64,000 nucleotides of DNA from positions 248,001 to 312,000 of the forward strand of contig JANJGN010000121.1 of assembly GCA_026770705.1 (NCBI GenBank), in the 5' to 3' direction. Source of the DNA: Isurus oxyrinchus. Taxonomy: Eukaryota. Positions 19,658 through 56,000 of this stretch are shown here, one piece after another (positions within the stretch are counted from its first letter, which is position 1; every line of letters begins with the position of its first letter). A model generated the notes under the pieces. The model searched no databases and was not told where the DNA came from. It saw only the letters and a program-made list of their open reading frames with translations. The translations under genes were made by a program, and so were the position numbers.

Positions 19658-19906
19658 TCAGTTTCGCTTGAATCTGATCTGTGCGTATTCCGTCTTCTCT
19701 TCCCTGTGGACAGACCCATCACCACTGGGCACCCTGAAGACTTGGGGATTGGCATAGAGAAGGTCGTTGGGATTGTCAGGGATTCCATGTCCAGCATTGC
19801 CTCCCACTGCACCTTCAGAGAGACCCCGGGGAACTGGGGTCTCCCCCTCGCTAGTTGTGTCTCTGGTTGTGTTCCGGGGCTCAGTAATCAGCACGTTCTG
19901 TTTACC
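19658..19906 (-). CDS. Gene B terminal exon with LLYANP (degenerate ITIM) and TEYAQI (ITSM-like)
   Basis: tttctctgtag acceptor, phase 0; ...DLLYANPQVFRVPSGDGSVHREEKTEYAQIRFKRN* has the motif spacing typical of CD33-related Siglec tails. Confidence 0.85.
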   Translation of the reverse strand, partial: GKQNVLITEPRNTTRDTTSEGETPVPRGLSEGAVGGNAGHGIPDNPNDLLYANPQVFRVPSGDGSVHREEKTEYAQIRFKRN

Positions 19907-22900
19907 CTACAGAGAAATGGAAACAGAAGACATCCTCACATCAATTACTGGCACTGATAGGGTTAAATTATTGTGCAGCCTGGTTAGTGTCAGTCGTGTC
20001 TCAGTTGGTTTAACTCTCTCTCTCATATCATATAAAAGAAACCACCTATGGCAGGGCAGCACTCCTTCAGTACTGACCCCCGACAGCGCAGCACTCCCTC
20101 AGTACTGACCCTCTGTCAGTCTCGGACTCCCTCAGTACTGACCCCCGACAGCGCAGCACTCCCTCAGTACTGACCCTCTGTCAGTCTCGGACTCCCTCAG
20201 TACTGACCCCTGACAGCGCAGCACTCCCTCAGGACTGACCCTCTGTCAGTCTCGCACTCCCTCGGTAATGGCTCTGGTGAGTGCCGGCTTGGATTCTGCA
20301 CTCAGGTGCCTGGTGTGAGGCTCAATAACATGCACCTTGTAATCAGAGAGAGGATGAGAGGGAAGAGAAAGAGAGAAAGGGATAGAGATAGGGTGTTATT
20401 AATCTATTAACGTATGTAATGTAATTGGAAATTGTCTTTTTAAACAGGGGTTTAGTCTGTGGGTGTGTCTGTGAGTGTTTTAATTGGATTAAAGCCAGCC
20501 AGTCTGGGTACTTTGATGTCAAGTAGTTTTGAGATGTAAACAAAGAGGTAAAGGGGTAATTTGCATCTTTAAACAGAGCACTCAATGTCTGGGAGTGAAA
20601 TCTTAAACGAAGCAATGTTTATATTACTAATAAAATTGATACGATGAAGGGTGGAGTTCAAAGGTCCTGATGATACAATGAGAATTTACATTCAAAGAGA
20701 AGCATTGGGTATAACTTGAGCAGTTTTTTGTGTGCAGAGCAGAGGCTTGTAACATCAAAGCAGCTGTAAGCCTACACCTGTCTGCAAAGGAACCAAAGTG
20801 AAAGGAACCTCATTTGGAATTTGTGAGGTGAAAATGCTTTGCTGGAATCTGCTTAAAGTCTATGTGTTGTCTTAGAGGAGATTAGTTTGGGAATTTGTTA
20901 AAGTTATGATAATACTAGTTTGTAGCCATGTGCATATGTTTAACTTGTGTTAATTAATAAATGTCTCATGTAGATTGATATAAAACCATCTCGAGAACTG
21001 GTGGTCTTATTCCTGAATTTAGAGCTGCATCTCAAACATTCCACTGGGAAATATAGGTTATGACAGTTGTTTAAAGTTTCCCTCTGGGATTTGAAACAAC
21101 AGCCTTTAACAGTTGCTGTGTCATAACAGAGAGACAGCATGATACTGAACCATTGCTGACTCCACAGATACAAATCAGTGGGTGACTGGGCTGGGAATCT
21201 GGGACATGTGTTGTCTACACACTGAGATTGAAGCTTTGGAGTGAGTGTAAACAGCTCCTGTACCTGGTGCTTCACAGAGAGTGGACTGGGAATCAATGCA
21301 ATGTCACTGGTCCCTGAAACTCTCTCCGCCATTGCTGTCTTTCTCCTGCAATAACACAATATCACACTGTGGTTATCATATAGCAGAGAGTCAGTGCAGC
21401 ACAGACACAGAGCTCACTGTAACCTTACACCAATGACTGGACTGTCTCTTTAAATCACTTCTGCACAAAGCACAGAATCAAGAAGCTTGACACCATCCAG
21501 GACAAAGCAGCCCGATTGATCTACACCCCATCCACCACATTAAACATTCACTCCCTCCACAACGAACACACAGTGGCAGCAGTGTGTGTACCATCTACAA
21601 GATGCACTGCAGCAACTCAGCAAGGCTCCTTCGTCAGCACCTTCCAAACCCACGACCTCTACCATCTAGAAGGACAAGGGCAGCAGACACATGGGAACGC
21701 CACCACCTGGAAGTTCCCCTCCAAGTCACTCACCATCCTGACTTGGAAATATATCATCGTTCCTTCACTGTCACTGGGTCAAAATCCTGGAACTCCCTCT
21801 CTAACAGCACTGTGGGTGTACCTACACCACATGGACTGCAGCGGGTCAAGAAGGCAGCTCACTACCTCCTTCTCAAGGGGCAATTAGAGATGGGCAATTT
21901 AATAACGGCCTCACCAGTGACAGTCACATTCGATGAAAGAATTTAAAATCTCACAGCTCAGGAGGAAGCCACTCAGCCCATCGTGCCTGTGCTGGCCCTT
22001 TGTAAAAACTGTCCAAATAGTCCTAAGCAAATGTTTATATTAAAATCAAGTTAAATCTTCAGACTTACTTTCTCACACAGATGAAGATGAAGATTCCAGC
22101 CAGGAAAACACTCAACATGATCCCAGCCGTGAACAATCCTACTGTCCATTTACTGGAGTCTCTACCTGTAAAAACAGTCATTAATTACTGCACTACAGGT
22201 TTACAATGATGCTCCGATGTATCTCGAGAAGCGATACACTCACTCAGTGTTTAAATACTCATTCTCGGGCAATGCTGACATTTATTGTCCATCCCTAGTT
22301 TCCCCTTGAGAAGGTGGTGGGGGGTCTTCCTCCTGAACCACTGGTTTGTCCCAAACTGGGAGACCAGTTCAGAGGGCAGGTAAGAGTTAACCATGTTGGT
22401 GTTTGAGACTGGAGTCACATATACACCCAGACCTGTTAAAATGGACAGGTTTCCCTCCCTTAAGATCATTAGTGACCCATATTATATATGTAATTTATAT
22501 ATATATGTATCAACTACCCTCCCTAAAATAATCAATTATCACCTCAATTTCATGCTGTTGTTTGTGGGATCTTGCTGTGCACAAATCAGCTGTTGCGTTT
22601 CTTACATGATGACAGTGAGCTCACTTTGAAACTGCTTCACTGGTTATCGAGCGTTTTGGGAATTCCTAAGTATTTTATCAACGCAAGTCTTATATTTTGA
22701 TTTAATCCATGTAACATTTATATATAATATTTATCAATGTGATCCCTATAGCATAAATTTATAATATTTATCAATATAATCTATGTAACATTTATATATA
22801 ATTTTTATCCATTTAATTTCTGTAATATTTATATATAATGTTTCTCGATCTAATCCATGTAACATTTATATATAACATTTATCAATGTAATATATGTAAC

Positions 22901-34900: not shown

Positions 34901-36819
34901 GCAAGGCTTGTGGCAGAAAGGGCCATTGACAGCGGCAGGGCACGAGAGCAAAGGCTGATGCAGCTACAAAGAGCCGTGCGCTGATCCAATCAAAATGTAA
35001 GAGTTAACCACATTGACGTGGAGTCTGGAGTCACATGTCGGCCAGACAATTTTGTTCCCTAAAGGGCACTGGTGAACCAGGTGGGATTTCCAACAATGGT
35101 TTTGTGGTCATCACTAGACTTTGAATTTCATCTTTTTATTAAATTCAAATTCCATCATCTATTATGGCAGGATTTGAACCCATATGCTCAGGACATTACC
35201 CTGGGTCTCTGAATTACTCGTCCAGCAACAATACCACTACACCATCACCTCACCTTATTCCATCACTGACAGAGAGCATGTTTGGTGGGCCAGTAGTGAC
35301 CAATTTCGCTACTCTTACCCATTCTACTCTCTCAGAAACCAGAGGGCAACTTTTAAAACTACAAGAGAAGATAAGGAATGTTCATGATAAAAATGGAGGT
35401 GCAGAGTTGCCAAGTTTACAGTTGGGACAAGTTCACATCCAGCATCCCACAGAAGGTTCATGACCACCAGCCGAGGTGACAAGGATTTGTTCAGAACCAA
35501 GGGCCTATGGAGTCAAACACACAAGGGCACAGCGGTGAGGCGGAACCGAGGATAAATCAGATCCATTCCCGCTCCTATTCCATCGAGGAGAAGATCCCAC
35601 ATGAAATCAGGAACAACATCCAAGGGTGACAATCCCACAGATCACTGTGAGCAGTTAAAGACACCTCCGGACAAGGTAACCAGCACAAGATCTGGGTGGA
35701 CCAGAAGGTTAAATCCAAACTTTAGAGAGTCAAATATTTAACAGTTCCATGCACTTATGTAATTGTCAATAAATATGAACATGATATGAGAAACCGTTTG
35801 TTCCCTGCCCTTCTGAAAGATCCATTCCTGCAGCGGGAGCCTGAAGAGTTACTGATAAGAGATTTAATTTATCGGATTGTGGAATGATCCGGAACTGAAG
35901 GAAGCCATTTGGCCCATCGAGCCTGTGCTGGGCCTTTGAAAGATCTGTCCAATTAGTCCCACTCTCACCTCTGCTCTCTCCTCCACAGCCCTGCAAAATG
36001 TCCCCTTCAAGTATTTATCCAGTTCCCCTTCTGAAAGTTCCTGTTGAATCTGCTTCCACCGCCCTTTCAGGCAGTGAGTCAATGGTCTCTCTCTGAGCTG
36101 CAAAGTGATAAGTTTCAATGAAATATAAACTCTGCAGCAGATCAGAAACAATCATGAGAACTCAGAATATTTGACAGTTTTACACACGGACAGCTTTACC
36201 TCCCTTCTCTCTATCAGTTATCTTGCTCCCTTATTGAAGTATCTAGCAAGGTGAGAATGGACAGGAAGTGTGACACTGAACAGCCTGTCTATTCTAGGAG
36301 CTGCTGTGTTGTCTTCATGGGAAATTCTGACAAAATCAGCAAAAGACACAAAATTTCAGGGCATTGTTATCCGAGTCCCAGCATCAGGATAGACCTCATC
36401 CCCCAGTTGGTGTTCCTGATTCTCTAGTCAGCGGATCGCTCCCCTGTCACTGGCTGAACTACACTGACTCCCAGTCCAGCAATGACTCAAATTTCAAATT
36501 CTCATCATTGAGTTCTACCCCACCATCCCCCCTCTACACTCTCTATCTGTGTAACCTCCTCCAACCCTAAATCCCTCTGAGATCTCTGCACTCCTCCAAT
36601 TCTACTGTCAGACAGGGAGTCAGTGTATATCAGTGAGCACAGGGGTGATGGATGAATGGGACTTGGTGTCAGTTTGTACACTGGCTCACTGCTGAATCGG
36701 TTCCCAATCACACTCAATAAGAATGATCTTTTACAAAGACTATTAGCCATAAAACTGTCCGAGCTGACGACGTTATTACCTTCGAGAAGTGACAGGAGGA
36801 AGTAGGATTTCCCGATCAT
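19658..36819 (-). CDS. Gene B (spliced, complete, about 478 aa): Siglec-like receptor, L-V(Arg-less)-C-C2(MAG d5-like)-TM-cytoplasmic tail
   Basis: Exons 36780-36819, 31159-31536, 26477-26773, 23819-24112, 22069-22165, 21264-21345, 19658-19906 are phase-compatible and sum to 1437 nt (479 codons including the stop). Confidence 0.8.
20055..20270. repeat. 33-bp minisatellite with a 66-bp dimer structure
   Basis: Alternating gacagcgcag and gtcagtctcg units. Confidence 0.88.
20416..21128 (+). mobile_element. Solo-LTR-like element
   Basis: TG...CA ends; absent from the paralogous gene A intron; similar to 16267-17095. Confidence 0.45.
21264..21345 (-). CDS. Gene B cytoplasmic exon 1 (RKTAMAERVSGTSDIALIPSPLSVKHQ)
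   Basis: Phase 2 in and phase 0 out; paralog of 469-550. Confidence 0.75.
21475..21950 (+). mobile_element. Non-LTR retrotransposon 3' fragment
   Basis: Same family as 52935-53990 (aagctcgacaccatccagga ... cttctcaaggggcaatta). Confidence 0.6.
22069..22165 (-). CDS. Gene B transmembrane exon
   Basis: Identical to the gene A TM exon. Confidence 0.88.
22700..23470. repeat. 37-bp AT-rich minisatellite (aatctatgtaacatttatatataatatttatccattt)
   Basis: About 20 units; a single unit sits at the paralogous position in gene A (1843-1877). Confidence 0.92.
23819..24112 (-). CDS. Gene B membrane-proximal Ig exon, MAG domain 5 / Siglec-5,-10 last-domain type
   Basis: KPEISQQSECTRRSEGVTCICVANSNPPGDLTWHLP..VTGSLTL..SCSVQNPHG has the C-x7-C-x-C pattern of these domains; 294 nt, phase 1-1. 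Confidence 0.85.
24415..24700. repeat. 37-bp tandem repeat (tatctctgtaacctcctccagcccctacaaccctccc)
   Basis: About 7 units; degenerate reverse-complement arrays at 29750-30050 and 57880-58360. Confidence 0.85.
24830..25885 (+). mobile_element. Penelope-like retroelement 3' part (GIY-YIG endonuclease and terminal repeat)
   Basis: NLIYCIHCSQCGLLYIGDTKRRL..HFNT..EQHLIF..GTLQPSGLN; terminal ctctgaagaggagtcatacggactcgaaac repeat also at 10735-10865, 43775-43905 and 48642-48858. Confidence 0.85.
26214..26285 (-). pseudogene. 3' remnant of a C2 exon in gene B
   Basis: DYQCVAENEHGAVEGFITITVE plus donor; the rest of the exon is missing. Confidence 0.7.
26477..26773 (-). CDS. Gene B Siglec domain-2 C-set exon
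   Basis: 297 nt, near-identical to 10185-10481. Confidence 0.9.
27587..27963 (-). pseudogene. Gene B second V-set exon, inactivated
   Basis: TGA stop at 27926-27928, 1-nt deletion near 27890 (377 nt versus 378), donor GT changed to AT at 27585-27586; retains YFFRIE. Confidence 0.88.
28020..28850 (+). mobile_element. CR1-like LINE 3' fragment
   Basis: Degenerate FADDTKLGG, QRDLGVLVH and FKTEMRRNFLSQR motifs; copy at 56477-57270. Confidence 0.85.
30060..31020 (-). mobile_element. L2-like LINE RT fragment
   Basis: RPISSLSFTSKVLE..ETALIKVTN..LLDLSAAFDTLDH; copy at 58370-59330. Confidence 0.85.
31159..31536 (-). CDS. Gene B V-set exon lacking the essential Arg (YFFMIK)
   Basis: Intact 378-nt phase 1-1 exon with the Siglec Cys pattern; Arg replaced by Met. 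Confidence 0.9.
31760..33455 (+). mobile_element. LTR-like sequences (two adjacent, ending in ...taaca); copy at 60200-61892
   Basis: Non-coding, AATAAA signals, TG..CA-type ends; family not identified. Confidence 0.35.
33644..35720 (+). mobile_element. Degenerate Gypsy-type LTR retrotransposon (PBS-like site, gag with zinc knuckles, integrase-end remnant)
   Basis: aca|tggtgatcagtggtgg PBS-like site; MSTKFPSLNW..; CGRCG..CPA..CKACGRKGH; frameshifted. Confidence 0.75.
36780..36819 (-). CDS. Gene B signal-peptide exon (MIGKSYFLLSLLE)
   Basis: Paralog of 15138-15177; G|gtaat donor. Confidence 0.78.
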
Positions 36820-37410: not shown

Positions 37411-37629
37411 GGTAATCAGTGAGAAGATCGAGGATGTTTTGTGCTCTCAGCAAAACGTTTACCATGTGTGATCTGTCAGCTCATATTTGGGCAGCTGTAG
37501 TCATGAAGCTTCTCCATTGGCTCCGTGGGATTAGACTCCTCCCCCTCACCACTGAGGCTGAAACTCAGGCGATAGAGTCCCCAACACAGGTCTCGGGCCG
37601 TATGATACATTTCAACGACCCCTGTTATC

Positions 37630-39520
37630 ATTACGGAGGGAGTGCTGCACTGTCAGCGGGACTCTACTGTGGGAGTGCTGCACTGTGGGAGGGTCAGTAA
37701 TGTGGGAGTGCTGCACTATCAGAGGGTCAGTAATGAGGGAGTGCTGCACTGTCAGAGGGTCAGTAATGTGGGATTGCTGCGCTGTCAGAGGGTCAGTAAT
37801 GAGGGAGTGCTGCACTGTCAGAGGGTCAGTAATGTGGGAGTGCTGCACTGTCAGAGGGTCAGTAATGAGGGAGTGCTGCACGGTCAGAGGTTCAGTACTG
37901 AGGGAGTGCTGCACTGTCAGATGGTCAGTACTGAGGGAGTGCTGCACTGTCGGAGGTTCAGTACTGAGGGAGTGCTGCACTGTCACCGGGTCAGTAATGA
38001 GGGAATGCTGCACTGTCAGATTGTCTGCACTGAGTGAGTTCCGCACAGTCAGAGGGTCAGTATTGAGGGGGTGCCGGACTGTGGGAGGGTTAGTACTGAG
38101 GTAGAGTGGAGTGTGAGAAGATATCCTTTCATGGCAAAGTTTAACTGGAATTTATTTAAACAGAATTCTTGTACTGTGTGTTATTGCAAAAGAAAGGATT
38201 TGAGGAACTAAGTCTTGTTCCCGTAAGCCTAAAAATAATTTTCATCGATTTCAATGATTTAGCATTGAAACCTCCCTCTTTGTGCACCAGTCTTGATTGA
38301 AACAACTCGCACAGCACTGTGGGAGGGTGAGTACTGAGGGAGTGCTGCACTGTGGGAGGGTGAGTACTGAGGGAGTGCTGCACTGTGGGAGGGTGAGTAC
38401 TGAGGGAGTGCTGCACTGTGGGAGGGGGAGTACTGAGGGAGTGCTGCACTGTGGGAGGGGGAGTACTGAGGGAGTGCTGCACTGTGGGAGGGTGTGTACA
38501 GAGGGAGTGCTGCACTGTGGGAGGGTGAGAATTGAGGGAGTGCTGCACTGTGGGAAGGTGAGTACAGAGGGATGGCTGCACTGTGGGAGGGTGAGTACTG
38601 AGGGAGTGCTGCACTGTCAGTGCGTCTGTACCGAGGGAGTGCTGCACTGTCAGAGGGTCGGAAATGAGGGAGTGCTGCACTGTCAGAGGGTCAGTAATGA
38701 GGGAGTGCTGCACTGTCAGAGGGTCAGTAATGAGGGAGGGCTGCACTATCAGAGGGTAAGTAATGTGGGAGTGCTGAACTGTCGGCGGGTCTGTATTGAA
38801 TGAGTTCCGCATAGTCAGAGGGTCAGTATTGAGGGGGTGCCGGACTGTGGGAGGGTTAGTACTGAGGTAGAGCCGAGTGTGAGAAGGTATCCTTTCATGG
38901 CAAAGTTTAACTGGAATTTATTTAAACAGAATTCTTGTACTGTGTGTTATTGCAAAAGAAAGGATTTGAGGAACTAAGTCTTGTTCCCATAAGCCTAAAA
39001 ATAATTTTCACCGATTCAATGATTTAGCATTGAAACCTCCCTCTTTGGGCACCAGTCTTGATTGAATCAACTCGAACAGCACTGTGGGAGGGTGAGTACT
39101 GAGGGAGTGCTGCACTGTAGGAGGGTGAGTACTGAGGGAGTGCTGCACTGTGGGAGGGTTAGCACTGAGGGAGTGCTGCACTGTCAGAGAGTCTGTAATG
39201 AGGGAGTGCTGCACTGTCAGAAGGTGTGTACCGTGGGAGTGCTGAACTGTCGGAAGGTCAGTAGTGAGGGAGGGATACAGTGCCAGAGGATCAGTACTGA
39301 GGGAGTGCTGCACTGTGGGTGGATGAGTACTGAGGGAGTGCTGCACTGTCAGATTGTCAGCCATGAGGGTGTGCTGCACTGTCAGAAGGTCAGTGCTGAC
39401 AGGGTGCTGCACTTGAAAAGGGTCAATAATGAGGTAGTGCAGCACTGTCAGAGGGACAGTAATGAGGGAGCGCTGCACTGACCGAGGGTCAGGATTGAGG
39501 AAACGCTGCACTGTCAGTTC
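37630..39520. repeat. Three 33-bp minisatellite blocks with a duplicated ~210-bp spacer
   Basis: Blocks 37630-38100, 38310-38865 and 39075-39520; spacer 38100-38310 repeated at 38865-39075. Confidence 0.92.
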
Positions 39521-40214
39521 TGTGCGTGGTCTGCAATGTCCTAAGTGCATTCTAGGCACAGCCCAAGATTCCGCCTGATGTCTGTGTAACAACAACATCA
39601 TGTACATGTCGAGAATAATTCTCACTGTGTTGGTGCAGCAAGACAGTTTTGGAATGGCACCACCACTGGCAGGAGTGTGCAGCTGCAATGTGACGTGTTT
39701 ACATTGAAAATTTCCATTATACAGATGGCCACAGGAATTCATCTGACTGGAAAAAGTGACAACATGAAATAATGTCTTTGAGCCAAGAATCTGGCAGCAA
39801 AATAAGAATTTTAATCCATAAGTATCTACAGAAAAGGCTGAACATTTTAATCACTTGTGTTAATCAATGTAATTTTATTCATAACCCAAATGCTTCTTAC
39901 AATCTATCGCAGCATGAAAAAGGTGCAGCATTCAGAAAGCTCATTCCAATCAGAGAACAGAGTTTAGCAATGTCACATTTCTGTTCATTCCTATTCGACC
40001 ATGTTGGCTGCACACAGCCAGACAATGCCGTGGTATGATGTGTCCACACAGCAGGACTGGGGAGCACCAGGTATAAGGAAAAGTTTCAGCTTGCTGAGGA
40101 GAAGAAGGAGAATCTCTCGTTCCAGGTTTCTCTCCGTACATTAAGAAGCAGGCATGCCAATGTTTCATTGCACTCTGTCTGCTGATGGGAGTCCGCTTGG
40201 AAATTACTGTTTGT

Positions 40215-40820
40215 GCTGATGGAAAGAATAAGCTTTTCATAAATCGAGGGATTGAGTACAAACACAGGGAGGTTATGCTGAACATTTATAAAGCTCTGGT
40301 TAGGTCACAACTAGAGTATTGTGTCCAGTTCTGGTCTCCTCACTTTGGGAAGGAAGTGAGGGTCCTTGAGAGGGTGGGGAGGAGATTGAGCAGAATGGGT
40401 CCAGGGATGAGGGATTTTAGCTACAAGGTTGGGTTGGAGAAGCTGGGGTTGTTCTCCTTGGAGCAAAGGAGATTGAGGGGGGATCTGATCGAGGTGTACA
40501 AGATGATGATGGGTTTAGATACGGTAGACAAAGAGAAGCTGTTGCCATTAGCTGATGGGACAAGGACTGGGGGACACAGATTGAAGATTTTGGACAGAGG
40601 GGGATGTGAGGAGGAACTTTTTTACACAGCGAGTGGTAATGAGCTGGAACTCGCTGCCTACGAGGATGGTGGAAGCGGAGACGATGAATGATTTCAAAAG
40701 GAAATTGGATGGACACTTGTAGAGATACAGGGATAGAGAGGGGGAATGGGACTGACTGGATTGCTCTACAGAGAGACAGCATGGACTTAATGGGCTGAAT
40801 GGTCTCCTACTGTGCTGGAA
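40215..40820 (+). mobile_element. CR1-like LINE 3' end
   Basis: YKALVRSQLEYCVQFWSP..LGLFSLEQRRLRGDLIEVYK. Confidence 0.9.
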
Positions 40821-40938
40821 TGCCTCTCTGATACGAAGGTGATTCTAACCAGGACACTGACCAGTTTCATTACAACTTAACACAACATCACACGTTATTT
40901 GTCCGCACTGACTGACCAGATTGTTGCTGTACAAATCT

Positions 40939-41078
40939 TCAAACAGTCTGTCGACTTCCTTTCACTGTTTGTCTCTCCCAGACACAGACTCCAGCGATAG
41001 TGATAACCACAGCCACAAGGAATATCACAGCTCGTATTCCCAGGATCAGGATCACGTGCAGAATCTCTCCTCCACTGT
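40939..41078 (-). CDS. Gene C terminal TM exon with intramembrane Arg and a short tail (SGGEILHVILILGIRAVIFLVAVVITIAGVCVWERQTVKGSRQTV*)
   Basis: Strong ttttttctgtgtgttctctag acceptor; the phase-1 reading gives a long hydrophobic segment with one Arg and a 12-aa Tyr-free tail. Confidence 0.8.
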
Positions 41079-42750
41079 CTAGAGAACACACAGAAAAAAA
41101 TCATCACTGACTCTCCGCTTTCAATCTCTCACTCTGGCTGAACAATCAAGCTTCATATCACTGCAACATTTGCTGTAATATTGACCCATCCACTGGGATT
41201 CAATGTGGAATGAATGTTTTCATTGTAAACACTCTAAGAGTGGACAATCGGAACTTTCCCCTTGGCGTGGAACATTGGTGAGAATGGATCATTGTGCTGT
41301 TGGACTCCCTGTCCAATGTTTCTCTCCATCGCTGTGTACAGGATTGTGCTGTAGAAAATTCTGGAAACGTTTAGTGCAGGGTGGAAATCCATCTCGGATG
41401 CGTGTGCGAATCGGGCAGGATCGAGATGGACTCCCCCACGGACTTACACCCCCCGCTTAATAAACAGTTCCAGTCTTTACCCAGAGAGAGGGGAGAATGT
41501 GGAACTCACTCCCACAGGGAGTGGTCGAGGTGAACAGTATCGATGTATTTAAGGGGCAGGAGGGTCGGTAACCAGAGGGACACAGATTGACCAACTGGAG
41601 GGGGAGATGAGGAGAATTTGTTTTGACAGAGCGAGTTGTTGTGATCTGGAAGGTTCTGCCTGAAAGGGTGGTGGAAGCAGATTCAATAGGAACTTTCAAA
41701 AGGGAAATTGGATAAACACTTGAAGGAGGAAGATGGGGTAAAGTGGAGTGGTGGTTAGTGGATCTGATTGGATAGAACATTGAAAGACCTGGCACAGCCT
41801 CAATGGGCTGAATGGCCTCCTCCTGTGCTGTATCATTCTCCGCTTCCATGATCTCTCCCCCAGTCAGTAACCACTCCAGATCCCTCTTGAAGGTGACAGA
41901 GAGACAGCAACGACCACACCCACTGACAGCACATTCCCGAGGATCACTACTCTCTGGGAAAAGATGAACTCCCCAACATCCAGCCTATTCCTGCTTCCCA
42001 GAGAGTGTAAACCCTTCAGGGAGGCGCTGAGGAAGTTTTCAATAAAATGAATTATCAAATCTATCATTTGAGTAATAATTTAATTCTGATGAACTCACAG
42101 CTTATGTAGCAAACTGGGAAGTGGGAGTTGCTTGAAAAGCTGGGAAACACAAGGATTAAGTGCTACAATGCCACCACTGGTGGGAGACTGTAACTACAGC
42201 GTGACGTTTACATAGGCAGTCATCATTATAAACAGGGGCATTGGACATACTGGGAAATATGTGCACTGGAAAGGTGAGTAAATGATGTAAGATTTTCACC
42301 AGCAGGAATTCTCGAACTAAACCTCTCCACCTCTCTCTTACTCTCAGATACACAAACAAAATCACACAGAATCAGATAAGGAGGAGTTGGGGCCGGTGAT
42401 TGTTCGAAGGGTTAGCTTTCAGGAAGCTTCTTAAAGGGAGAGAGAGAGTTGGAGAGGCAGAGAGTATCTGTGAGTGTCTCTATGCATCTGACTGTCTGTA
42501 ATAGACTTTGTAATTTCCATATTCTTCCATAAACATGATTGGGAACACAAATCCCAGAATTCAGGCCAACTCTCCAGTGCAGTACTCAGGTAAGCCACAG
42601 GGGAGTGTGTGCTAGTGTGTTTGTTCGTGAGTGTGTCTTTGTAATTGCTCATACATGTGTGTCTGCATGTGTCTATTTAGTTCTGTATATTTGTGTGTGT
42701 TTGTGTAATGTTTGAATCTGAGAGAGATGTTGATGTCTGTGTACACTCAC

Positions 42751-42903
42751 GTTCCACAGTGATGGTTATGAACCCCTCCACTGCTCCATGTTCATTCTCT
42801 GCCACACACTGATAGTCTCCAGTGTCCCGATATGTAATGGGAGGAATCACCAACCACAGCTCATTGTTGGAACTTGTTCTGTTCATTTGGACATTAAGAT
42901 GTC
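42751..42903 (-). pseudogene. 5'-truncated C2 exon of gene C
   Basis: HLNVQMNRT..DYQCVAE..TVE with donor; 5' half and acceptor replaced by unrelated DNA. Confidence 0.8.
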
Positions 42904-43226
42904 AGGGCAGGAATCAAGAAGCCCGTTCGCAGGATTACCAACAGAAAGTGAACCACAATTTATACTTAATGGGAAGAGAGTGCTGATTGGTTGGCAAGTG
43001 GTCTCTGATAGGTGGACGTGTTGCCATGGAGAATGGTGTGTGCGAGATGTAAACTTTAGACAGCTTGTCTCTTTATTCAGCAATAATCAAATAAAGATCA
43101 ATTAACTTCAATCGACTGTGAAGCACTTTGAGAGGTCTGAGAATGTGGACACTGAGAACGGGCTGCACTGTCAGAGGGTCAGCGCTGAGGGAGTGCTGAT
43201 GTAGAATGAAAGGTGTATGTACTTAC

Positions 43227-43523
43227 CTTGCACAGTTAGTACGAGGGTCCGCTCCGATGAAACAGATGGATATCTCACTCTGCAGCTGAGATTGTGTCCG
43301 TGGTGTTTGAGTGATGGGATCAGGGTCAGAACAGAAATATAGGTCAGAGTGACACCATGCTGAGTTACAGTGTTTGAGACTGATCCAGGTACGTCAGTGG
43401 GAGTGTCCCAGGTTAAGACAGGTGCTGCTGTTCCATTGCACGTTGTGTTGATGGTGCAGCTTACATCCACATGCTTTCCTGCAATAATTTCAGCAGGGAA
43501 TATCGTGGGTTTATCTGTGAAAT
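43227..43523 (-). CDS. Gene C Siglec domain-2 C-set exon (intact)
   Basis: 297 nt, open, canonical splice sites. Confidence 0.8.
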
Positions 43524-44382
43524 CTAACAGACAGAGAATGGATCCTTTTAGAGAAATATAACGTGAAGCATCAGTTCAAATAGAAATCACAGTCCCACAA
43601 GAGAAAGCACTTTTACAAGGATGATATCAGAACTGAGAGGTTACAATGATCAGGAAAGATTTTCTTGCTCTTTGGCAGTAGTGTTTCTGTCTCTCAGCTT
43701 AATACACGTTCACTCCGAGACATGTGAATTGAGAACACTGGATGAGAGAAGAGGCTCAGACCAGAGATTGGAGTTAAAAGCAGAATACTGCGGATGCTGG
43801 AAATCTGAAACAAAAACAAAAATTGCTGGAAAGACTCAGCAGGTCTGACAGTATCAGTGGAGAGGAAGACAGGGTTAACGTTTCGAGTCCGTATGACTCT
43901 TCATCAGACCAGAGGTTTGAGTTCACTGGCTTCTCATTTCCTCAGTGATCTGGGTGTTTTATCACCTTGTGGTTTGTTGGATCTTGCTGTGCACAAACTG
44001 CCTGCTGTGTTTAACATCTGTGACCACAATTCAGGAATAATTTCATTGGCTGTGAAGGGATTTGGATCCTCCTGAGGTGGTAAATTGCGCTACAGAAATG
44101 CACATCTTTCTTTTATCGATACGTCAGACTTTTAAACAGGACAGGAGAGATTGATGGGTGTGGATAACCTGATAATACAGTTAATGCTTTTCATCATTGA
44201 TATTAAAGTGAGTATTAGAGGTTGCTTTAGGACTGAACTGGAAGCTATCACCAGGTTATTGAGAATCAGACAGTGTGTTATAATAAGCTGTGTTTTGTGT
44301 TAATATGTAAACGTCACAGTTTGTGTTATTTCCCATTGAGTGTTGGATGTGAATTGTTGAGTAATTATAACACAGCACTTAC

Positions 44383-44413
44383 CAGAAACGTGAAGCTGGG
44401 TTACAGGGTAATA
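44383..44413 (-). pseudogene. V-exon 3' stump (YPVTQLHVS) fused to the upstream intron
   Basis: Flanks match gene A 11341-11360 and 11718 onward; about 345 bp including the acceptor are missing. Confidence 0.85.
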
Positions 44414-45104
44414 TAAATGTCAATATTTAACTCTGGATGGTTTGTCAATCCACTAGACTTGATATCCACTCCCTCCATCACTGGGGCACAGTGGCTGCAA
44501 TGTGGACTAACTACAGGACACACAAGGAACTCCCCAAGGTTTCACAATGGATGGAAGAGAATCCTGGACACAGGAGTGGACAAGTTCATTCTACATTGGC
44601 TCATGGTCCTCAGGACCCTGTTTAGTGAAGCCAGTCTTCCACCCAACACAGTGTCTACAAGACACACAGGGAAACTGTGTAAACATCTCATCTCTCTACA
44701 CCGACTGGTTTGGCTTCGGTTTAACTTTCAGTTATTTTACTTCCTTATTGTGGTTGCTATGGTGAAACTGTGCAGGAAGTGTGAGGGCTGGACTCTCTGT
44801 CTATTCTGACTGCAGCTGTGATGTGGTCGTGGTGTTTCTCAGTAAAATGAAACCCTCTGATCTCCTCCATCGCCGAGGTTTAGGGAGTGAATTCCAGAGC
44901 TCAGGCCCCAGGCAGCTGAAGGCACGGCCGCCAGTATTGGAGTGATGGGAATCGGGGGATGGTCAAGAGGCCGGAATTGGAGTAACACAGAGATCTGGGA
45001 AGTTGTTTGGTTGAGTTGCAGGACGTTACAGAGATAAAGAGATAAGAATGATCTTTTACAAAAACTGTTAAACATAAATCTGTCCATACTGACAATGATA
45101 TTAC

Positions 45105-45144
45105 CTTGGAGAAGTGACAGGAGGAAGTAAGATTTCCCGATCAT
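45105..45144 (-). CDS. Gene C proximal signal-peptide exon (MIGKSYFLLSLLQ)
   Basis: Paralog of the other leader exons, intact donor. Confidence 0.7.
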
Positions 45145-45594
45145 TGTCCACTCCCAGATATTCCATCCACTTCTCACTCTCAAGCTGTGAAAGAGAAAAG
45201 AGTTAATGAGACTTCACCTATTGTCCGACAGCTTTCAAGAGATCAGAACAGCTTTTAGACAATATCTTCACAGAATAATTTGATTCTCTGTGGGATGATA
45301 GGTGATCTGCAGAGAGTTACAAGGCTTTAAGAAAGAAAAACAATGAAGGATTTGCATTTCTATCGCAGCTTTCACCTCCTCAGGATGGCCCAAAGCTCAT
45401 GTCTCTGCAGTTCCCTCATCCCTTGAGCTAGAAAGATGTTCTGTACAACAGACTTGAGCCTCACACCCAGATCTCAATAATCAGTAGAAATCTTTCAAAG
45501 GCATCAATCATTGGAATCTGTCTTTATAAAGTCACAACATCAACAAAGGACGGTGTTGGTGGTGGAAGTGAATTCCAATCGTTCCGTTACTTAC

Positions 45595-45736
45595 CCAGTA
45601 CCTGTCCGACTGCTCGCCTGGGGAGGAACTGCCCACACGCTCTGCTTGGGCTGAATGACCTCTTCCTGTGCTGCCCCCTCTGTGTATTTAGTGAGAAAGG
45701 GTTGATGTGTCTCTGTGAGACAAAATGAGGAAGTTG
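45595..45736 (-). promoter_or_regulatory. Putative 5'UTR exon / promoter block copy
   Basis: Copy of 15610-15750 with GAGGAAGT. Confidence 0.45.
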
Positions 45737-45954
45737 GATCAAAGTAACAGAGCAGCTCATGTTTTGAGATGTTGGTGAACTTTGTGTCCTGACCCTGTGG
45801 TGATATTTCTGCTCACAGGTGGACAGTCAATGACCAGGAGTTTCTCCTGTGGGTCAGTGGGTTTCACAGCCAAATTCAGGGGGTCAGAATGTTGTGGGAT
45901 TCAAGACCCGATTCAGGGGACGTCTGCCCCACAGAGTAGACTGAAACTCCCCAG

Positions 45955-46165
45955 TGTCAGTACTGAGCAAGTGCTGCACTGTCGGATGGTCATTACTGAG
46001 CGAGTGTTGCACTATTGTAAGGTCAGTACTGAGGGAGATCTCCACTGTTTGAGGGTCAGTACTGAGGGAGTGCTGCACTGTCAGAGGGACATTAATCAGG
46101 GAGTGCTGCAATGTTGGAGGATCAGTACTGAGGGAGTGCTGCACTGTTGGAGGGTCAGTAGTAAG
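45955..46165. repeat. 33-bp minisatellite, degenerate
   Basis: About 6 units. Confidence 0.8.
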
Positions 46166-46319
46166 GTGCTGATTTACAAGACAGGACAATGGATTAGGAG
46201 CCCTCAGAACTCCCCCCATTATCACCATCATGAATCACTAATTAGCCTAACATTCCTGTCTGCTCTTCAACACAGCTGATTGGCTAATCTGATTCACTAT
46301 CATTGGTGCACTTTGTATG

Positions 46320-46445
46320 TTCATTGTCTAAGGAATCTCTTTGGATCCTCATTGTCTAAGGAATCTCTTTGGATCCTCATGTCTAAGGAATCTTTTTGGA
46401 TCCTCATTGTCTAAGGAATCTCTTTGGATCCTCATTGTCTGAGGG
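46320..46445. repeat. 28-bp tandem repeat (ctcattgtctaaggaatctctttggatc)
   Basis: About 4 units; about 2 units at the paralogous site 13890-13950. Confidence 0.85.
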
Positions 46446-47230
46446 ATTATTTCTGATCCAAACCCCATATTGTTGTATTGTTGATTCCGATGCAGCATTG
46501 TAGACTGACTTGTCCCCAAGCTCAGCACTGAACCTACTCCAGCAGACACTGTGAAACACACTAACAAAGCGCCTCTAGCCTGAGCTCTGCATGTGTCAAG
46601 AGCAAAGACAAATATGCAAACTGAATATTGACACCTTTGCACACAGACAGCTTTACCTTCCTTCTCTCTTTCAGTTATCTTGCTCCCTTATTGAAGTATC
46701 TAGCAAGGTGAGAATGGACAGGAAGTGTGACACTGAACAGCCTGTCTATTCTAGGAGCTGCTGTGTTGTCTTCATGGGAAATTCTGATTAAAATCAGCAA
46801 AAGACACAAATTTCATTCCTTTGCTATCGGAGTCCAAGCATCAGGATAGACTTCATCCCCCAATATTTATCACTGTTTCTCAACTCAACACCTCACGCCT
46901 TCCGCCACTCGCTGACCTGCACTGGCTCCCAGTCCAGCAGAGCCTCGAGTTTAAGATTCTCATCCTCAATTTCCATTCCCTCCATTCCTCTTCTCCAATC
47001 ACTTTCTCCTCCCACCATGCAAACCTCAAAGTCCTCTGCTCTCCTCCAATTCTGCTGTCAGACAGGGAGTCAGTGTATATCAGTGAGCACAGGGGTGATG
47101 GGTGAATGGGACTTGGTGTGAGTTTGTACACTGGCTCACTGCTGAATCTGTTCCCAATCACAGCTCAATAAGAATTATGTTTTACAAAGATGATTAGCCA
47201 TAAATCTATCCAAGCTGACAATGATATTAC

Positions 47231-53000: not shown

Positions 53001-56000
53001 ACAGCGGAAACAACATGCTATAGACAGAGCAAAGCGATCCCACAACCAACGGGTCAGATCTAAGCTCTGCAGTCCTGCCACATCCAGTCATGAATGGTGA
53101 TGGACAATAAAGATCTAACAGGAGGAGGATGTTCCACAAATATCCCCATCCTTAATGATGGGGGAGCTCAGCACATCAGTGCAAACAACAAGGCTGAAGC
53201 ATTGGCAACCATGTTCAGCCAGAAGTGCTGAGTGGATGATCCATCTCGGCCTCTTCCAGAGGGTCCCAGCATCACAGATGTCAGCTTTCAGACAATTCGA
53301 TTGACTCCACGTGACATCAGGAATCAGCTGATGATACTGGATACAGCAAAGGCTATTGGCCCTGGCAACAACCCAGCAACAGGAAATAATGTGGCTACAA
53401 GAGCGGGTAAGAGGCTGGGAACTCTGCAGTGAGTAATTCAACTCCTGACCCCCCAAAGCCTGTCCACCATCGGACAAGGCACAAGTCAGGAGTGTGATGG
53501 AATAATCTCCACTTGGCTGGATGAGTGCAGCTCCAACAACACTCAAGAAGCTCGACACCATCCAGGAGCAGCTTGTTTGATCGACAGCCCAGCCACCAGC
53601 ATAAACATTCATACCCTCCACCACTGGCACACAATGGCAGCAATGTGCACCATGTACAAGATGCGCTGCAGCAACTCACCAAGGCTCCTTCGACAGCACC
53701 TTCCAAACCCTTAACCTCATCCACCAAGACAGTTCCAAGTCAGTGAGGTGTGTGACTTGGAGGCGAACTTGAGGTGGTGGTCTGCCCTGGGACTTGGAAC
53801 TATATCGGCCGTTCCTTCACCGTCTCTGGGTCAAAATCCTGGAACTCCCTCCCTAACAGCACTGTGGGTGTACCTACACCACATGGACTGCAGTGGTTGA
53901 AGAAGGCAGCTCACCACCACCTTCTCAAGGGGCAGTTACAGATGGGCAATAATTTCTGGCCTTGTCAACAATACTCACATCCCATGAGCTAATAATAAGA
54001 GAACGTTCAATTCTGTGTAACTCACGTTCCACAGTGATGTTTATGAATCCCTCCACTGCTCCATGTTCATTCTCTGCCACACACTGATAGTCTCCAGTGT
54101 CCCTGGATGTAACGTGAGGAATCACCAACCACAGCTCATTGTTGGAACTTGTTCTGTTCATTGGGACATTAAGATGTCGCCACATCAGGTTAGAAGCTGG
54201 GAAGCTCTCGACAGAGCAGATTATCACTGCAGAATTCCCCTCAATTATAATGATCGATGAAGCGTTAATCATATCAAGAAAATTAATTGAGAGATTCTGT
54301 GGTGCATCTATAAACAAATAAACATCAATTAAGTTACACTGACTGTGAAGCACTTTGAAAGACACTTAGAATGTGAAAGGTATGATCTCAATGTAGGTTC
54401 ATTTTCACAAAGCCCGTAATCCAGGCAGAGACTTCAGTTCAGTACTGAGGGAGTGCTGCACTGTCAGAGAGTCAGTACTGAGGGAGTGCTGCACTGTCAG
54501 AGAGTCAGTACTGAGGGAGCACTGCACCGTCAGAGGTTCAGTGCTGAGGGAGTGCGGCACTGTCAGAGGGTCATTACTGAGGGAGTGCTGTACTGTTGGT
54601 GGGTAAGTACTGAGGGAGTGCTGCACTGTCAGAGAGTCAGTACTGTGGGAGTGCTGTACTGTCAGAGGTTCAGTACATAGGGACAGCTGCACTGTCTGAT
54701 GGTCAGTCCAGAGGGGGTGCTGCACTGTTGGAGGGTCAGAACTCGGGGGGTGCTGCAGTGTGGGAGGGCCAGTACTGAGGGAGCACTGCACTGTTGAAGA
54801 GTCAGTACTGAGGGAGTGCTGCACTATCGAAGGTTCAGAACTGAGGGAGTGCTGCAGTGTTGGAGATTCAGTATTTAGGGACTGCTGCAGTGTCAGAGGC
54901 GAATTTGTATCAGTTAAAGACTATTGATTTGTTGCTAAACACAATGCAGTTGTGGGATCTTGCAGTGTACTATGTAGAGCTTTCTAGCTAATGTAGATGG
55001 AAGGGTGTCCGTTCTTACCTTGCACAGTTAGTACGAGGGTCCGCTCCGATGAAACAGATGGATATCTCACTCTGCAGCTGAGAGTGTGTCCGTGGTGTTT
55101 GAGTGATGGGATCAGGGTCAGAACAGAAGTATAGGTCAGAGTGACACCATGCTGAGTTACAGTGTTTGAGACTGATCCAGGTACGTCAGTGGGAGTGTCC
55201 CAGGTTAAGACAGGTGCTGCTGTTCCATTGCACGTTGTGTTGAAGGTGCAGCTTACATCCACACGCTTTCCTGCAATAATTTCAGCAGGGAATATCATGG
55301 GTTTATCTGTGAAATCTAACAGACAGAGAATGGATCCTTTTAGAGAAATATAACGTGAAGCATCAGTTCAAATAGAAACCACAGTCCCACAAGAGAAAGC
55401 ACTTTTACAAGGATGATATCAGAACTGAGAGGTTACAATGATCAGGAGAGCATTTCCTGCTTTGACACTTTGGTGTTTCTGTCTCTCAGCTTAACACACG
55501 TTCACTCCGAGACACTTGAACTGATAATAGTGGGTGAGGGTGGAGGAGCAGACCAGAGTTTGGAGTGCACTACCCCATCATTCACTCAGCGATCTGGGCC
55601 ATTTATTACTTTGCAATTTGTGGGAGCTTGCTGTGCGCAAATTGGCTGCTGTGTTTCTCACATTACAACAGTAACTACAATTCAGGAATCAGCTCATTGG
55701 CTGTGAAGTGATTTGGTACGTTCTGAGGTGGTGAAAGGTGCTATAGAAATGTGAATCTTTCTTCTGTCGATATGTCAGGCTTCGAGACATTAGAGATTAG
55801 GATTAGAGAGATCGATGGGAGTGGATAACCTGATAACATTGATGGACACTGTCAATATATTTAATCATTGATATTAAAGTGAGTATTAGAGGTTGCTTTA
55901 GGACTGAACTGGAAGCTATCACCAGGATATCGAGAATCAGACAGTGTGTTATAATAAACTGTGTTTTGTGTTAATATGTAAACGTCATAGTTTGTGTTAT

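What the first reader, a model, noticed from the sequence alone, without database searches (positions are those of the whole stretch)
40939..41078. Activating-type TM exon with an intramembrane arginine
This reading is not in the ORF track. In phase 1 after a strong acceptor the exon gives ILHVILILGIRAVIFLVAVVITIAGVCVW plus a 12-aa Tyr-free tail and a stop. Established: a basic TM residue with a short tail marks receptors that pair with ITAM adaptors (DAP12, FcR-gamma), as in Siglec-14, -15 and -16. Gene C's C exon and V-C intron (43227-44405) are almost identical to gene A's (10185-11360), as expected for a conversion-linked inhibitory/activating pair.
Basis: partly seen in the sequence, partly recalled or inferred. 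Interest (0 to 1): 0.8.

Follow-up and report, generated by a model that had tools for sequence, protein, structure and literature searches.

The report
Shark Siglec activating-type membrane exon
This is a real, spliced exon that gives a shark Siglec-type immune receptor a membrane anchor with a buried arginine and almost no tail, the usual mark of an activating receptor, but related sharks already have such proteins annotated and this particular gene copy has lost its ligand-binding exon.

Summary
The reading is confirmed on the minus strand. After a pyrimidine-rich AG acceptor at 41079-41080, the exon 41078-40917 encodes a hydrophobic span with one Arg, a 12-residue Tyr-free tail and a stop at 40941-40939.

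Contigs of three public runs join 41078 directly to the C2 exon at 43227, with GT..AG ends.

The 45-residue peptide matches the C-termini of annotated shark proteins of Siglec-like, CD22-like and SLAM-like types. The Arg sits in an invariant ILGIRA motif. Catshark RefSeq models of 272-273 aa have exactly leader-V-C2-this exon.

The window's own gene C is damaged. About 345 nt of its V exon, acceptor included, are deleted. Its C2 exon has four private changes, all nonsynonymous. All four runs show the ancestral letters, and two show a 369-nt V exon instead. Expression of this very copy is not shown.

Adaptor coupling is inferred and the adaptor is unknown. The A/C near-identity tract is confirmed (97.5% over 1219 nt).

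This scan found the same exon type before on other DNA of this genome (s1-300793, s1-868675). It is a new member of a known kind.

The parts
40917..41078 (-). TM(Arg) exon, 162 nt. The coding part is 41078-40939, including the stop TGA at 40941-40939. The last 22 nt are 3'UTR.
   Evidence: Translation. Exon borders. Contig pieces 40917-41078 in X5 (record 17) and X6 (record 27), and the joint 41078->43227 in X1, X5 and X6. Homologues reach E = 7e-14.
41079..41103 (-). Splice acceptor: pyrimidine-rich tract ending in AG at 41080-41079.
   Evidence: Sequence. It is used as the 3' side of the joint with ends CT..AC on the plus strand, which is GT..AG on the minus strand.
40911..40916 (-). Splice donor gtcagt of a 3'UTR intron. 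The downstream UTR exon was not located.
   Evidence: Contigs of X5 (390 further letters) and X6 (55 further letters) both leave the window at 40917. The DNA-like contig X19 record 9 runs straight through 40742-41090. Sequence.
43227..43523 (-). C2-set exon (297 nt, phase 1 at both ends) that is spliced to the TM exon. It carries four private nonsynonymous changes, at 43292, 43337, 43452 and 43472.
   Evidence: Pfam C2-set_2, E = 1e-8. Joints. Private letters; codon effects. 86% identical to the S. canicula model P0014, which has the ancestral residue at all four sites.
42692..42901 (-). Relic 3' half of a repeat-type Ig exon, lying between the C2 exon and the TM exon. The joined contigs skip it.
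   Evidence: tblastn covers only residues 51-115 of the gene A repeat exon. blastn homology stops at 42903. The joint 41078->43227 skips it.
44383..44413 (-). Last 31 nt of the V exon, with its donor. The rest of the exon and its acceptor are deleted; the junction is at 44413/44415.
   Evidence: Gene A 11372-11716 has no counterpart in gene C. No AG stands upstream of the remnant. Contigs place 31 letters here and carry a 369-letter stretch between the leader and C2 exons.
45105..45183 (-). Leader exon: start codon plus 13 codons and 1 nt, ending in phase 1.
   Evidence: Sequence and translation. Contig pieces 45105-45183/4 in X5 and X6, each with 1 other letter. The same leader peptide opens P0001, P0013 and P0014.
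43195..44640 (.). Tract of 95-97.5% identity to gene A (10153-11927, the V-exon deletion aside). It is bounded on both sides.
   Evidence: 97.5% over 1219 nt and 94.8% over 211 nt, but only 89.9% in the leader region; matches fall to 30 per 100 columns below 43200 and to 21 of 52 above 44649.

Best explanation
The stretch is a genuine last-coding exon of a shark Siglec-type receptor gene. It supplies a very short stalk, a single membrane span with an arginine about one third of the way in from the outer face, and a 12-residue tail with no tyrosine.

Shown:
- The exon is spliced in phase to the C2-set Ig exon.
- The same exon, with the arginine in an invariant ILGIRA motif, ends annotated proteins of at least three kinds of Ig receptor in seven other shark species.

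Inferred:
- The buried arginine pairs with the membrane aspartate of a separate signalling chain (DAP12-, FcR-gamma- or CD3-zeta-type), so that a receptor with no signalling tail can activate the cell.
- All Ig exons here are phase 1-1 and the cassette starts in phase 1. It can therefore be placed behind any Ig exon, which would explain its spread between families.

In this window the cassette sits behind a damaged front end. Gene C has lost about 345 nt of its V exon, including the acceptor, and has four private amino-acid changes in its C2 exon. The RNA contigs carrying the cassette have a full V exon and the ancestral letters, so they come from an intact allele, a very close paralogue or an orthologue. 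The copy in the window is most likely a decaying or null version of an activating partner of the inhibitory-type neighbours.
For: - Reading, frame, acceptor and stop.
- The joint 41078->43227, with GT..AG ends on the gene strand, is in X1 (1 contig, side 31), X5 (1 contig, side 162) and X6 (1 contig, side 163). These are three studies and two organism labels. It is absent from the DNA-like run X19.
- The library search with the 45-residue exon gave 10 proteins at E <= 0.001. Nine carry the cassette, eight of them at the extreme C-terminus. NCBI names them CD33-like, Siglec-11/12/13, sialoadhesin-like, CD22-like and SLAM family member 9-like.
- Pfam confirms V-set/Ig_CD22 plus C2-set_2 in the Siglec-like proteins, runs of Ig_2/Ig_3 in the CD22-like ones, and a single Ig_3 in the SLAM-like ones.
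- Aligning the window exon with 8 of these proteins gives 13 invariant positions, including I11 L12 G13 I14 R15 A16.
- The S. canicula models P0013 and P0014 are leader-V-C2-cassette. They are 82% (31/38) identical to the window in the cassette and 86% (84/98) in the C2 exon.
- Family assignment: gene A's V exon hits V-set (9e-14) and Ig_CD22. Its best solved relatives are Siglec-5, CD33, Siglec-8 and MAG, and its FFRIE aligns with Siglec-5 FFRVE.
- Damage to this copy.
- General rule of a short tail plus a charged TM residue: PMC13358205, section 8 passage.
Against: - No adaptor was tested or even located by me, so coupling is pure inference.
- The runs are labelled 'RNA? (a guess)' and are Logan contigs. 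Such contigs can be chimeric between near-identical paralogues and cannot show level or strand.
- No contig in the four runs carries the window copy's private letters. At 43292, 43337, 43452 and 43472 all depth shows the other letter. So transcription of this very copy is not shown.
- The scan's notes report further copies of the same 140-nt exon elsewhere in this genome. The contigs could stem from one of those.
- Four of four nonsynonymous changes is not significant on its own and could also reflect selection rather than decay.
- The V deletion could be a haplotype variant or, less likely, an assembly fault.
Confidence: 0.75

Rival explanations
1. The locus is intact in most animals. The V-exon deletion and the four private changes belong to one haplotype (a null or variant allele) or to an assembly fault. 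The spliced contigs would then come from this very locus, which normally makes a full V-C2-TM(Arg) activating Siglec.
For: - The contigs' C2 exon is of gene C type. It follows gene C, not genes A, B or D, at all 8 sites that tell them apart.
- The X5 TM-exon piece has 1 other letter in 162, and the leader pieces 1 in about 80.
- The paralogous leader regions in the window are only 83-91% alike.
- No listed contig bridges the deletion junction 44413/44415 in any run.
- Human activating Siglecs are polymorphic nulls (abstracts of PMC4042635 and PMC5701461).
Against: - The unspliced X1 contig 41026-41668 differs from the window at 17 of 643 letters. That is high for alleles of one locus.
- The runs' organisms are coded, so I cannot tell whether any is the window's species.
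- Further copies of the exon are noted elsewhere in this genome.
Confidence: 0.3
2. The V-less copy is itself functional. Leader spliced straight to the C2 exon stays in frame and would give a small C2-only protein with the Arg membrane span. Such a protein could compete for, or chaperone, the adaptor without sensing sialic acid.
For: - The leader ends in phase 1 and the C2 exon starts in phase 1, so skipping stays in frame.
- The TM exon and its splice sites are intact.
- NCBI's great white shark model P0001 joins the same leader directly to a C2 exon.
Against: - No direct leader-to-C2 joint is listed without letters between. The row 43523->45105 carries 369 letters between (14 joints were not shown).
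- None of the four runs shows this copy's private letters.
- The leader alone is a short signal peptide (13 residues).
- P0001 continues into a repeat-type Ig exon, not into the cassette.
Confidence: 0.12
3. The membrane arginine does not recruit an ITAM chain. It might bind a non-ITAM partner such as a DAP10-type chain, or serve retention or turnover control.
For: - The sequence alone cannot name the partner.
- A 2014 genome screen did not find the FcR gamma chain in cartilaginous fish (PMC4016189, abstract and discussion passages).
- I found no paper on shark DAP12.
Against: - Thirteen membrane positions are invariant across unrelated ectodomains. That is what a specific helix-helix partner would impose.
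- A scan note reports a transcribed FcR-gamma gene in this genome (s1-863553; not tested by me).
- The short-tail-plus-basic-residue rule is general (PMC13358205 passage).
Confidence: 0.12
4. The reading is a chance open frame in an intron or repeat and not an exon.
For: It is absent from the ORF track and has no Pfam hit.
Against: Spliced joints in three runs. Homologues at E = 7e-14 and 1e-11 ending annotated proteins. Single copy in the window.
Confidence: 0.01

Closest known systems
Scyliorhinus canicula RefSeq models 'sialic acid-binding Ig-like lectin 14 isoform X2' (P0014, 273 aa) and 'lectin 13' (P0013, 272 aa); also S. torazame 'CD33-like' XP_072325011.1 (P0002)
   Same: Same leader peptide, same V - C2 - Arg-span order and the same split junction to the cassette. 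The cassette is 82-84% identical and the C2 exon 86% identical.
   Different: The window's copy has no usable V exon and four private residue changes. The catshark models stop seven residues earlier in the tail. They are automatic predictions; no experiment is known to me.
Human Siglec-14 paired with Siglec-5
   Same: An activating and an inhibitory receptor form a pair with near-identical outer domains, and the pair is polymorphic (PMC4042635, abstract only). A membrane Arg, a short tail and DAP12 coupling are recalled, not from a call.
   Different: It is a mammalian CD33-related lineage. The membrane span is not detectably related: the exon search returned only shark proteins. The number of Ig domains differs (recalled).
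Human Siglec-16 paired with Siglec-11
   Same: The outer-domain exons are kept alike by gene conversion, and the activating member exists as a non-functional form (PMC5701461, abstract only). Here a bounded 97.5% tract is shared with gene A and the activating copy is damaged.
   Different: Here the damage is loss of the V exon. The direction and date of any conversion were not determined.
Macaque activating KIR / KIR2DL4
   Same: An Arg-bearing membrane region was transplanted by recombination onto another receptor's outer part, and the depth of the charged residue decides the adaptor (PMC8102735, abstract and introduction passages).
   Different: There the Arg is at membrane position 4 and pairs with FcR-gamma. 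Here it is position 8 of the best 21-25-residue hydrophobic window, nearer the position-9 depth that the paper gives for DAP12 partners.
Siglec-15
   Same: V plus one C2 domain. Gene A's V exon matches solved Siglec-15 at E = 2.5e-8. A basic membrane residue and DAP12 coupling are recalled.
   Different: Siglec-5, CD33, Siglec-8, MAG and sialoadhesin match far better, at 1e-15 to 1e-13. This is not a Siglec-15 orthologue.

Membership tests
Siglec (sialic acid-binding Ig-like lectin) | N-terminal V-set domain with the essential arginine of the FR motif | tested here: not met
   In the window's gene C only the last 31 nt of the V exon remain, with no acceptor. The feature is met in the neighbour gene A (V-set 9e-14, FFRIE aligned to Siglec-5 FFRVE) and in the relative P0014.
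Siglec (sialic acid-binding Ig-like lectin) | C2-set domain following the V domain | tested here: met
   Exon 43523-43227 hits Pfam C2-set_2 at E = 1e-8. It is 95% identical to the great white shark 'Siglec 12, partial' and 86% to S. canicula 'Siglec 14 X2'.
Siglec (sialic acid-binding Ig-like lectin) | Binds sialylated glycans | not testable with these tools
   This needs a binding assay. The window's copy lacks the binding domain.
Adaptor-coupled activating immunoreceptor | Basic residue inside the membrane span | tested here: met
   A single Arg stands at position 8 of the best 21-25-residue hydrophobic window. It is invariant in the alignment of the window exon with 8 shark proteins and is present in P0011, P0013 and P0014.
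Adaptor-coupled activating immunoreceptor | Short cytoplasmic tail without tyrosine motifs | tested here: met
   The tail is 12 residues with no Tyr. The tails of the 10 C-terminal homologues are 4-12 residues, none with Tyr.
Adaptor-coupled activating immunoreceptor | Physical and functional association with DAP12, FcR-gamma, CD3-zeta or DAP10 | not testable with these tools
   No adaptor gene lies in the window. Only scan notes mention an FcR-gamma gene elsewhere in the genome.
Conversion-linked inhibitory/activating pair | Outer-domain exons and intron nearly identical to a neighbour, with lower identity outside the tract | tested here: met
   Identity is 97.5% over 1219 nt and 94.8% over 211 nt, against 89.9% in the leader region. 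There is no homology downstream of 43195.
Conversion-linked inhibitory/activating pair | The partner carries ITIM/ITSM motifs | tested here: inconclusive
   Gene A's tail lies beyond the window start. Gene A shares its uncharged TM exon peptide with gene B. Gene B has a tail exon with LLYANP and TEYAQI.

The most novel reading that the evidence does not exclude
Sharks use one deeply conserved Arg-bearing membrane cassette (invariant ILGIRA, phase-1 start). It has been moved by exon shuffling behind the Ig exons of at least three receptor families: Siglec-like, CD22-like and SLAM-like. One dedicated signalling chain would then serve all of them. Activating copies made this way would turn over fast, as this V-less copy suggests. 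That would be a modular route to activating receptors, unlike the family-by-family origin described for mammals.
Probability: 0.45. Interest if true: 0.55.

Novelty: new member of a known kind. Interest (0 to 1): 0.35.

Why it matters
Paired activating and inhibitory Siglec-type receptors, with exchange of outer-domain sequence between the pair, are best known from primates. This locus shows the same arrangement in a shark gene cluster. The activating partner uses a membrane exon shared with other shark receptor families.

It gives a concrete, testable handle on which signalling chain cartilaginous fish use: the exon, its invariant residues and full-length catshark models. A 2014 survey had reported the FcR gamma chain missing from this group.

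The specific copy adds a small point. Here the activating member is the one that is breaking down, as in humans. The exon type is already present in public annotation of related sharks and was met twice before in this scan, so the finding is solid but ordinary.

Tried and rejected
- **Chance open frame:** rejected.
- **Origin from the neighbours' TM exon by point change:** rejected. tblastn of the cassette against the window finds only itself (next best E = 0.15), and the uncharged TM exon peptide of genes A and B shows no likeness.
- **TM exon as an alternative end of gene D, A or B:** rejected. The contigs' C2 exon follows gene C at the 8 sites that tell the four genes apart.
- **Pfam on the two TM exons:** no family.
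- **Word search with the C2 exon:** one hit only, the great white shark partial model. The length window hides longer relatives.
- **Naming the adaptor from the Arg depth:** position 8 is nearer the DAP12-type depth than the FcR-gamma-type depth given in PMC8102735. I do not regard this as decisive.
- **Literature:** four searches found no paper in the held library on shark activating Siglecs or shark DAP12. The whale shark paper's Supplementary file 9 on Siglec families may bear on this.
- **Downstream 3'UTR exon:** I could not locate it, and I could not see the 369 letters of the contigs' V exon.
- **Species:** not established. The nearest named protein is from Carcharodon carcharias.

Full report
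**Observation**

The finding gives coordinates without a strand; the reading is on the minus strand. Upstream of 41078 the sequence is a pyrimidine-rich tract ending in AG. Translating from 41076 gives 45 open codons. These are a four-residue stalk, a hydrophobic span with one Arg, a 12-residue tail without Tyr, and TGA at 40941-40939.

The two leading bases complete a split codon. The C2 exon upstream (43523-43227, 297 nt) ends with one spare G, so the junction codon is G+AC, Asp.

A six-frame hydropathy scan gave 35 hits:
- 30 on the plus strand, most of them translations of TG-type simple repeats;
- 5 on the gene strand: this exon (score 2.86, second highest of all), the uncharged TM exons of genes A (1318-1250) and B (22142-22074), and one out-of-frame stretch at the C-exon acceptor of genes B and D.

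The exon has no second copy in the window.

**Context**

All genes lie on the minus strand.

| Gene | Exons found |
|---|---|
| A | V exon 11706-11341, C2 exon 10533-10153, seven repeat-type Ig exons, an uncharged TM exon |
| B and D | two V exons each |
| C | 31-nt V remnant, intact C2 exon, 3' half of one repeat-type exon, the Arg exon |

- Gene A's V exon is a Siglec V domain. It hits Pfam V-set at 9e-14 and Ig_CD22 at 1.7e-11.
- Its best solved relatives are Siglec-5 (1.5e-15), CD33, Siglec-8, MAG and sialoadhesin. Its FFRIE aligns with Siglec-5 FFRVE.
- The C2 exon hits C2-set_2 at 1e-8.
- A CR1-type reverse-transcriptase fragment and 33-nt minisatellites fill the spacers.
- The only word-search hit of the C2 exon is 'sialic acid-binding Ig-like lectin 12, partial [Carcharodon carcharias]' at 95% identity. 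The genome is therefore a shark's. I did not establish the species.

**Is the exon used?**

The look-up of sequencing runs with 40820-41130 listed 23 rows, 22 of which hold part of the stretch. All are Logan contigs, labelled 'RNA? (a guess)' or '?'. I laid X1, X5, X19 and X6 on 40600-46500.

- The joint 41078->43227 skips 2148 nt. Its ends are CT..AC on the plus strand, that is GT..AG on the gene strand.
- It stands in X1 (1 contig, side 31), X5 (1 contig, side 162) and X6 (1 contig, side 163). These are three studies and two organism labels.
- X19 covers introns like DNA and does not show the joint.
- The TM exon is thus spliced directly to the C2 exon, and the half repeat exon at 42901-42692 is skipped.
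- Both long contigs leave the window at 40917, where the genome reads gtcagt, while X19 runs straight through.
- So the exon is 162 nt long, and a 3'UTR intron begins 22 nt after the stop. By the usual 50-55-nt rule (established knowledge) that is too close to trigger nonsense-mediated decay.

**Which copy is transcribed?**

- Upstream, the contigs join the C2 exon to 31 letters at 44383-44413 (X1 2 contigs, X5 1, X6 1).
- X6 goes on to the leader exon 45105-45183. Its record 27 (972 nt) has 369 letters between the C2 and leader pieces.
- The X5 row '43523->45105' is also marked '369 letters between'.
- Gene A's V exon is 366 nt. So the transcripts carry a whole V exon that the window's gene C lacks.
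- In the window, gene A's 11372-11716 has no counterpart. The deletion removes the acceptor and all but the end of the exon.
- All four runs differ from the window at 43292, 43337, 43452 and 43472, with all depth on the other letter.
- At those four sites genes A, B and D all have the reads' letter. All four changes alter the protein: R17H, F24I, T62I and T77N of the exon.
- The catshark model P0014 has the ancestral residue at each site.
- At the other 8 sites that separate the four C2 exons, the contigs follow gene C.
- The unspliced X1 contig 41026-41668 differs at 17 of 643 letters.

My reading is that the transcripts come from an intact allele, a very close paralogue or an orthologue of gene C. 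Expression of the window's own copy is not shown. Contigs drop rare variants, so absence is not proven either.

**Relatives of the exon**

The library search with the 45 residues found 10 proteins at E <= 0.001, two of them at <= 1e-10.

- One, P0009, is a repeat protein with ten weak stretches. I set it aside.
- The other nine carry the cassette. Eight have it at the extreme C-terminus.
- In P0011 it is internal, in what looks like a mis-joined model.

NCBI's names and species:

| Name | Species |
|---|---|
| CD33-like, Siglec-12 | Scyliorhinus torazame |
| Siglec-13, CD22-like | Chiloscyllium punctatum |
| CD22-like | Hemiscyllium ocellatum |
| sialoadhesin-like | Rhincodon typus |
| hypothetical protein | S. 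torazame |
| SLAM family member 9-like | Mustelus asterias |
| Siglec-11 | C. plagiosum |

Pfam shows three kinds of outer part:
- V-set/Ig_CD22 with C2-set_2 and Ig repeats;
- runs of Ig_2/Ig_3 without a Siglec V domain;
- a single Ig_3.

Aligning the window exon with eight of the proteins (P0009 and P0011 left out) gives 13 invariant positions: L6, I11, L12, G13, I14, R15, A16, I18, F19, V23, G29, C31 and V32.

A word search restricted to the cassette of P0002 added two S. canicula models of 272 and 273 aa, one named 'lectin 14 isoform X2'. Both are exactly leader-V-C2-cassette. The Arg is present in all 11 cassette-bearing proteins read, and none of the 10 C-terminal tails has a Tyr.

The residue at the splice junction is D, Y, N and N in P0002, P0004, P0005 and P0006. 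This fits a split codon xAC fed by different upstream exons. It is L in P0003, which does not fit (my inference).

**Mechanism**

Shown: the exon anchors a Siglec-type outer part, and its membrane residues are far better kept than the outer parts it is attached to.

Inferred from the general rule (PMC13358205, section 8 passage): the Arg pairs with the membrane Asp of a separate signalling chain.

PMC8102735 (abstract and introduction passages) states that depth decides the partner. Lys at position 9 goes with DAP12. Arg at position 4 goes with FcR-gamma. Here the Arg is position 8 of the best 21-25-residue window. That leans towards a DAP12-type depth but does not settle it.

PMC4016189 (abstract and discussion passages) did not find the gamma chain in cartilaginous fish in 2014. 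A scan note reports a transcribed FcR-gamma gene in this genome (s1-863553), which I did not test.

**The pair claim**

- The tract 43195-44413 is 97.5% identical to gene A. The 211 nt upstream of the deleted V exon are 94.8% identical, and the leader region 89.9%.
- Identity to genes B and D is 82-93%.
- Homology ends abruptly at about 43195 and about 44640.
- This step pattern fits exchange between A and C but does not exclude a recent partial duplication.
- Gene A's tail is outside the window. Its TM exon peptide equals gene B's, and gene B has a tail exon with LLYANP and TEYAQI.

**Comparison and verdict**

The arrangement works like the primate Siglec-5/14 and Siglec-11/16 pairs (abstracts of PMC4042635 and PMC5701461), including a defective activating member. 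It is not their orthologue: the membrane exon has only shark relatives in my search.

Full-length proteins of this build are already in public annotation of catsharks. Earlier follow-ups of this scan reached the same reading for other copies (s1-300793, s1-868675). I re-tested their two main claims here and they held:
- reuse of the exon by three receptor families;
- existing annotation of such proteins in related sharks.

I found no paper on the subject in the held library. The result is a confirmed exon, a new member of a known kind, in a copy that has lost its ligand-binding exon.

Noticed in passing
window 44383-44415 (minus strand): There is a clean ~345-nt deletion of gene C's V exon, acceptor included, relative to gene A 11372-11716. 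Contigs of X5 and X6 carry 369 letters there instead. No listed contig bridges the junction.
   Followed up: partly
window 40911-40917 (minus strand): A 3'UTR intron starts 22 nt after the stop. Two contigs leave the genome at a gtcagt donor and carry 390 (X5) and 55 (X6) further letters. I could not place those letters in the laid stretch.
   Followed up: partly
window 42692-42901 (minus strand): Only the 3' half of a repeat-type Ig exon survives between the C2 exon and the TM exon. X1 contigs that map here continue with 48 loose letters at 42903 and differ at 5 clustered sites, so they come from paralogous exons.
   Followed up: partly
P0001 (great white shark, 153 aa, partial): NCBI's model joins the same 13-residue leader directly to a C2 exon with no V domain, then continues into a repeat-type Ig exon. 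V-less forms may be recurrent in this family, or this may be a model artefact.
   Followed up: no
window 19661-19906 (minus strand): Gene B's tail exon has LLYANP (an ITIM with its last position spoiled) and TEYAQI (ITSM-like), behind an uncharged TM exon at 22142-22074 whose peptide equals that of gene A's at 1318-1250.
   Followed up: partly
window 37600-39520, 45950-46170, 54435-54900, 1-256, 20045-20282: Arrays of a 33-nt minisatellite, open in several frames, recur between the genes. Contig depth there is very high in all runs.
   Followed up: no
window 40571-40817 and 41577-41830: Two ~250-nt copies of an interspersed repeat (70% alike, same orientation) flank the TM exon. Further copies lie at 968-1068 and 35882-36074. 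A CR1-type reverse-transcriptase fragment lies at 40098-40688 on the plus strand.
   Followed up: no
P0011 (Chiloscyllium plagiosum 'Siglec 11', 307 aa): In this model the Arg cassette is internal (residues 48-79) and is followed by a C2 domain. It is probably two neighbouring genes joined by the annotation pipeline.
   Followed up: no
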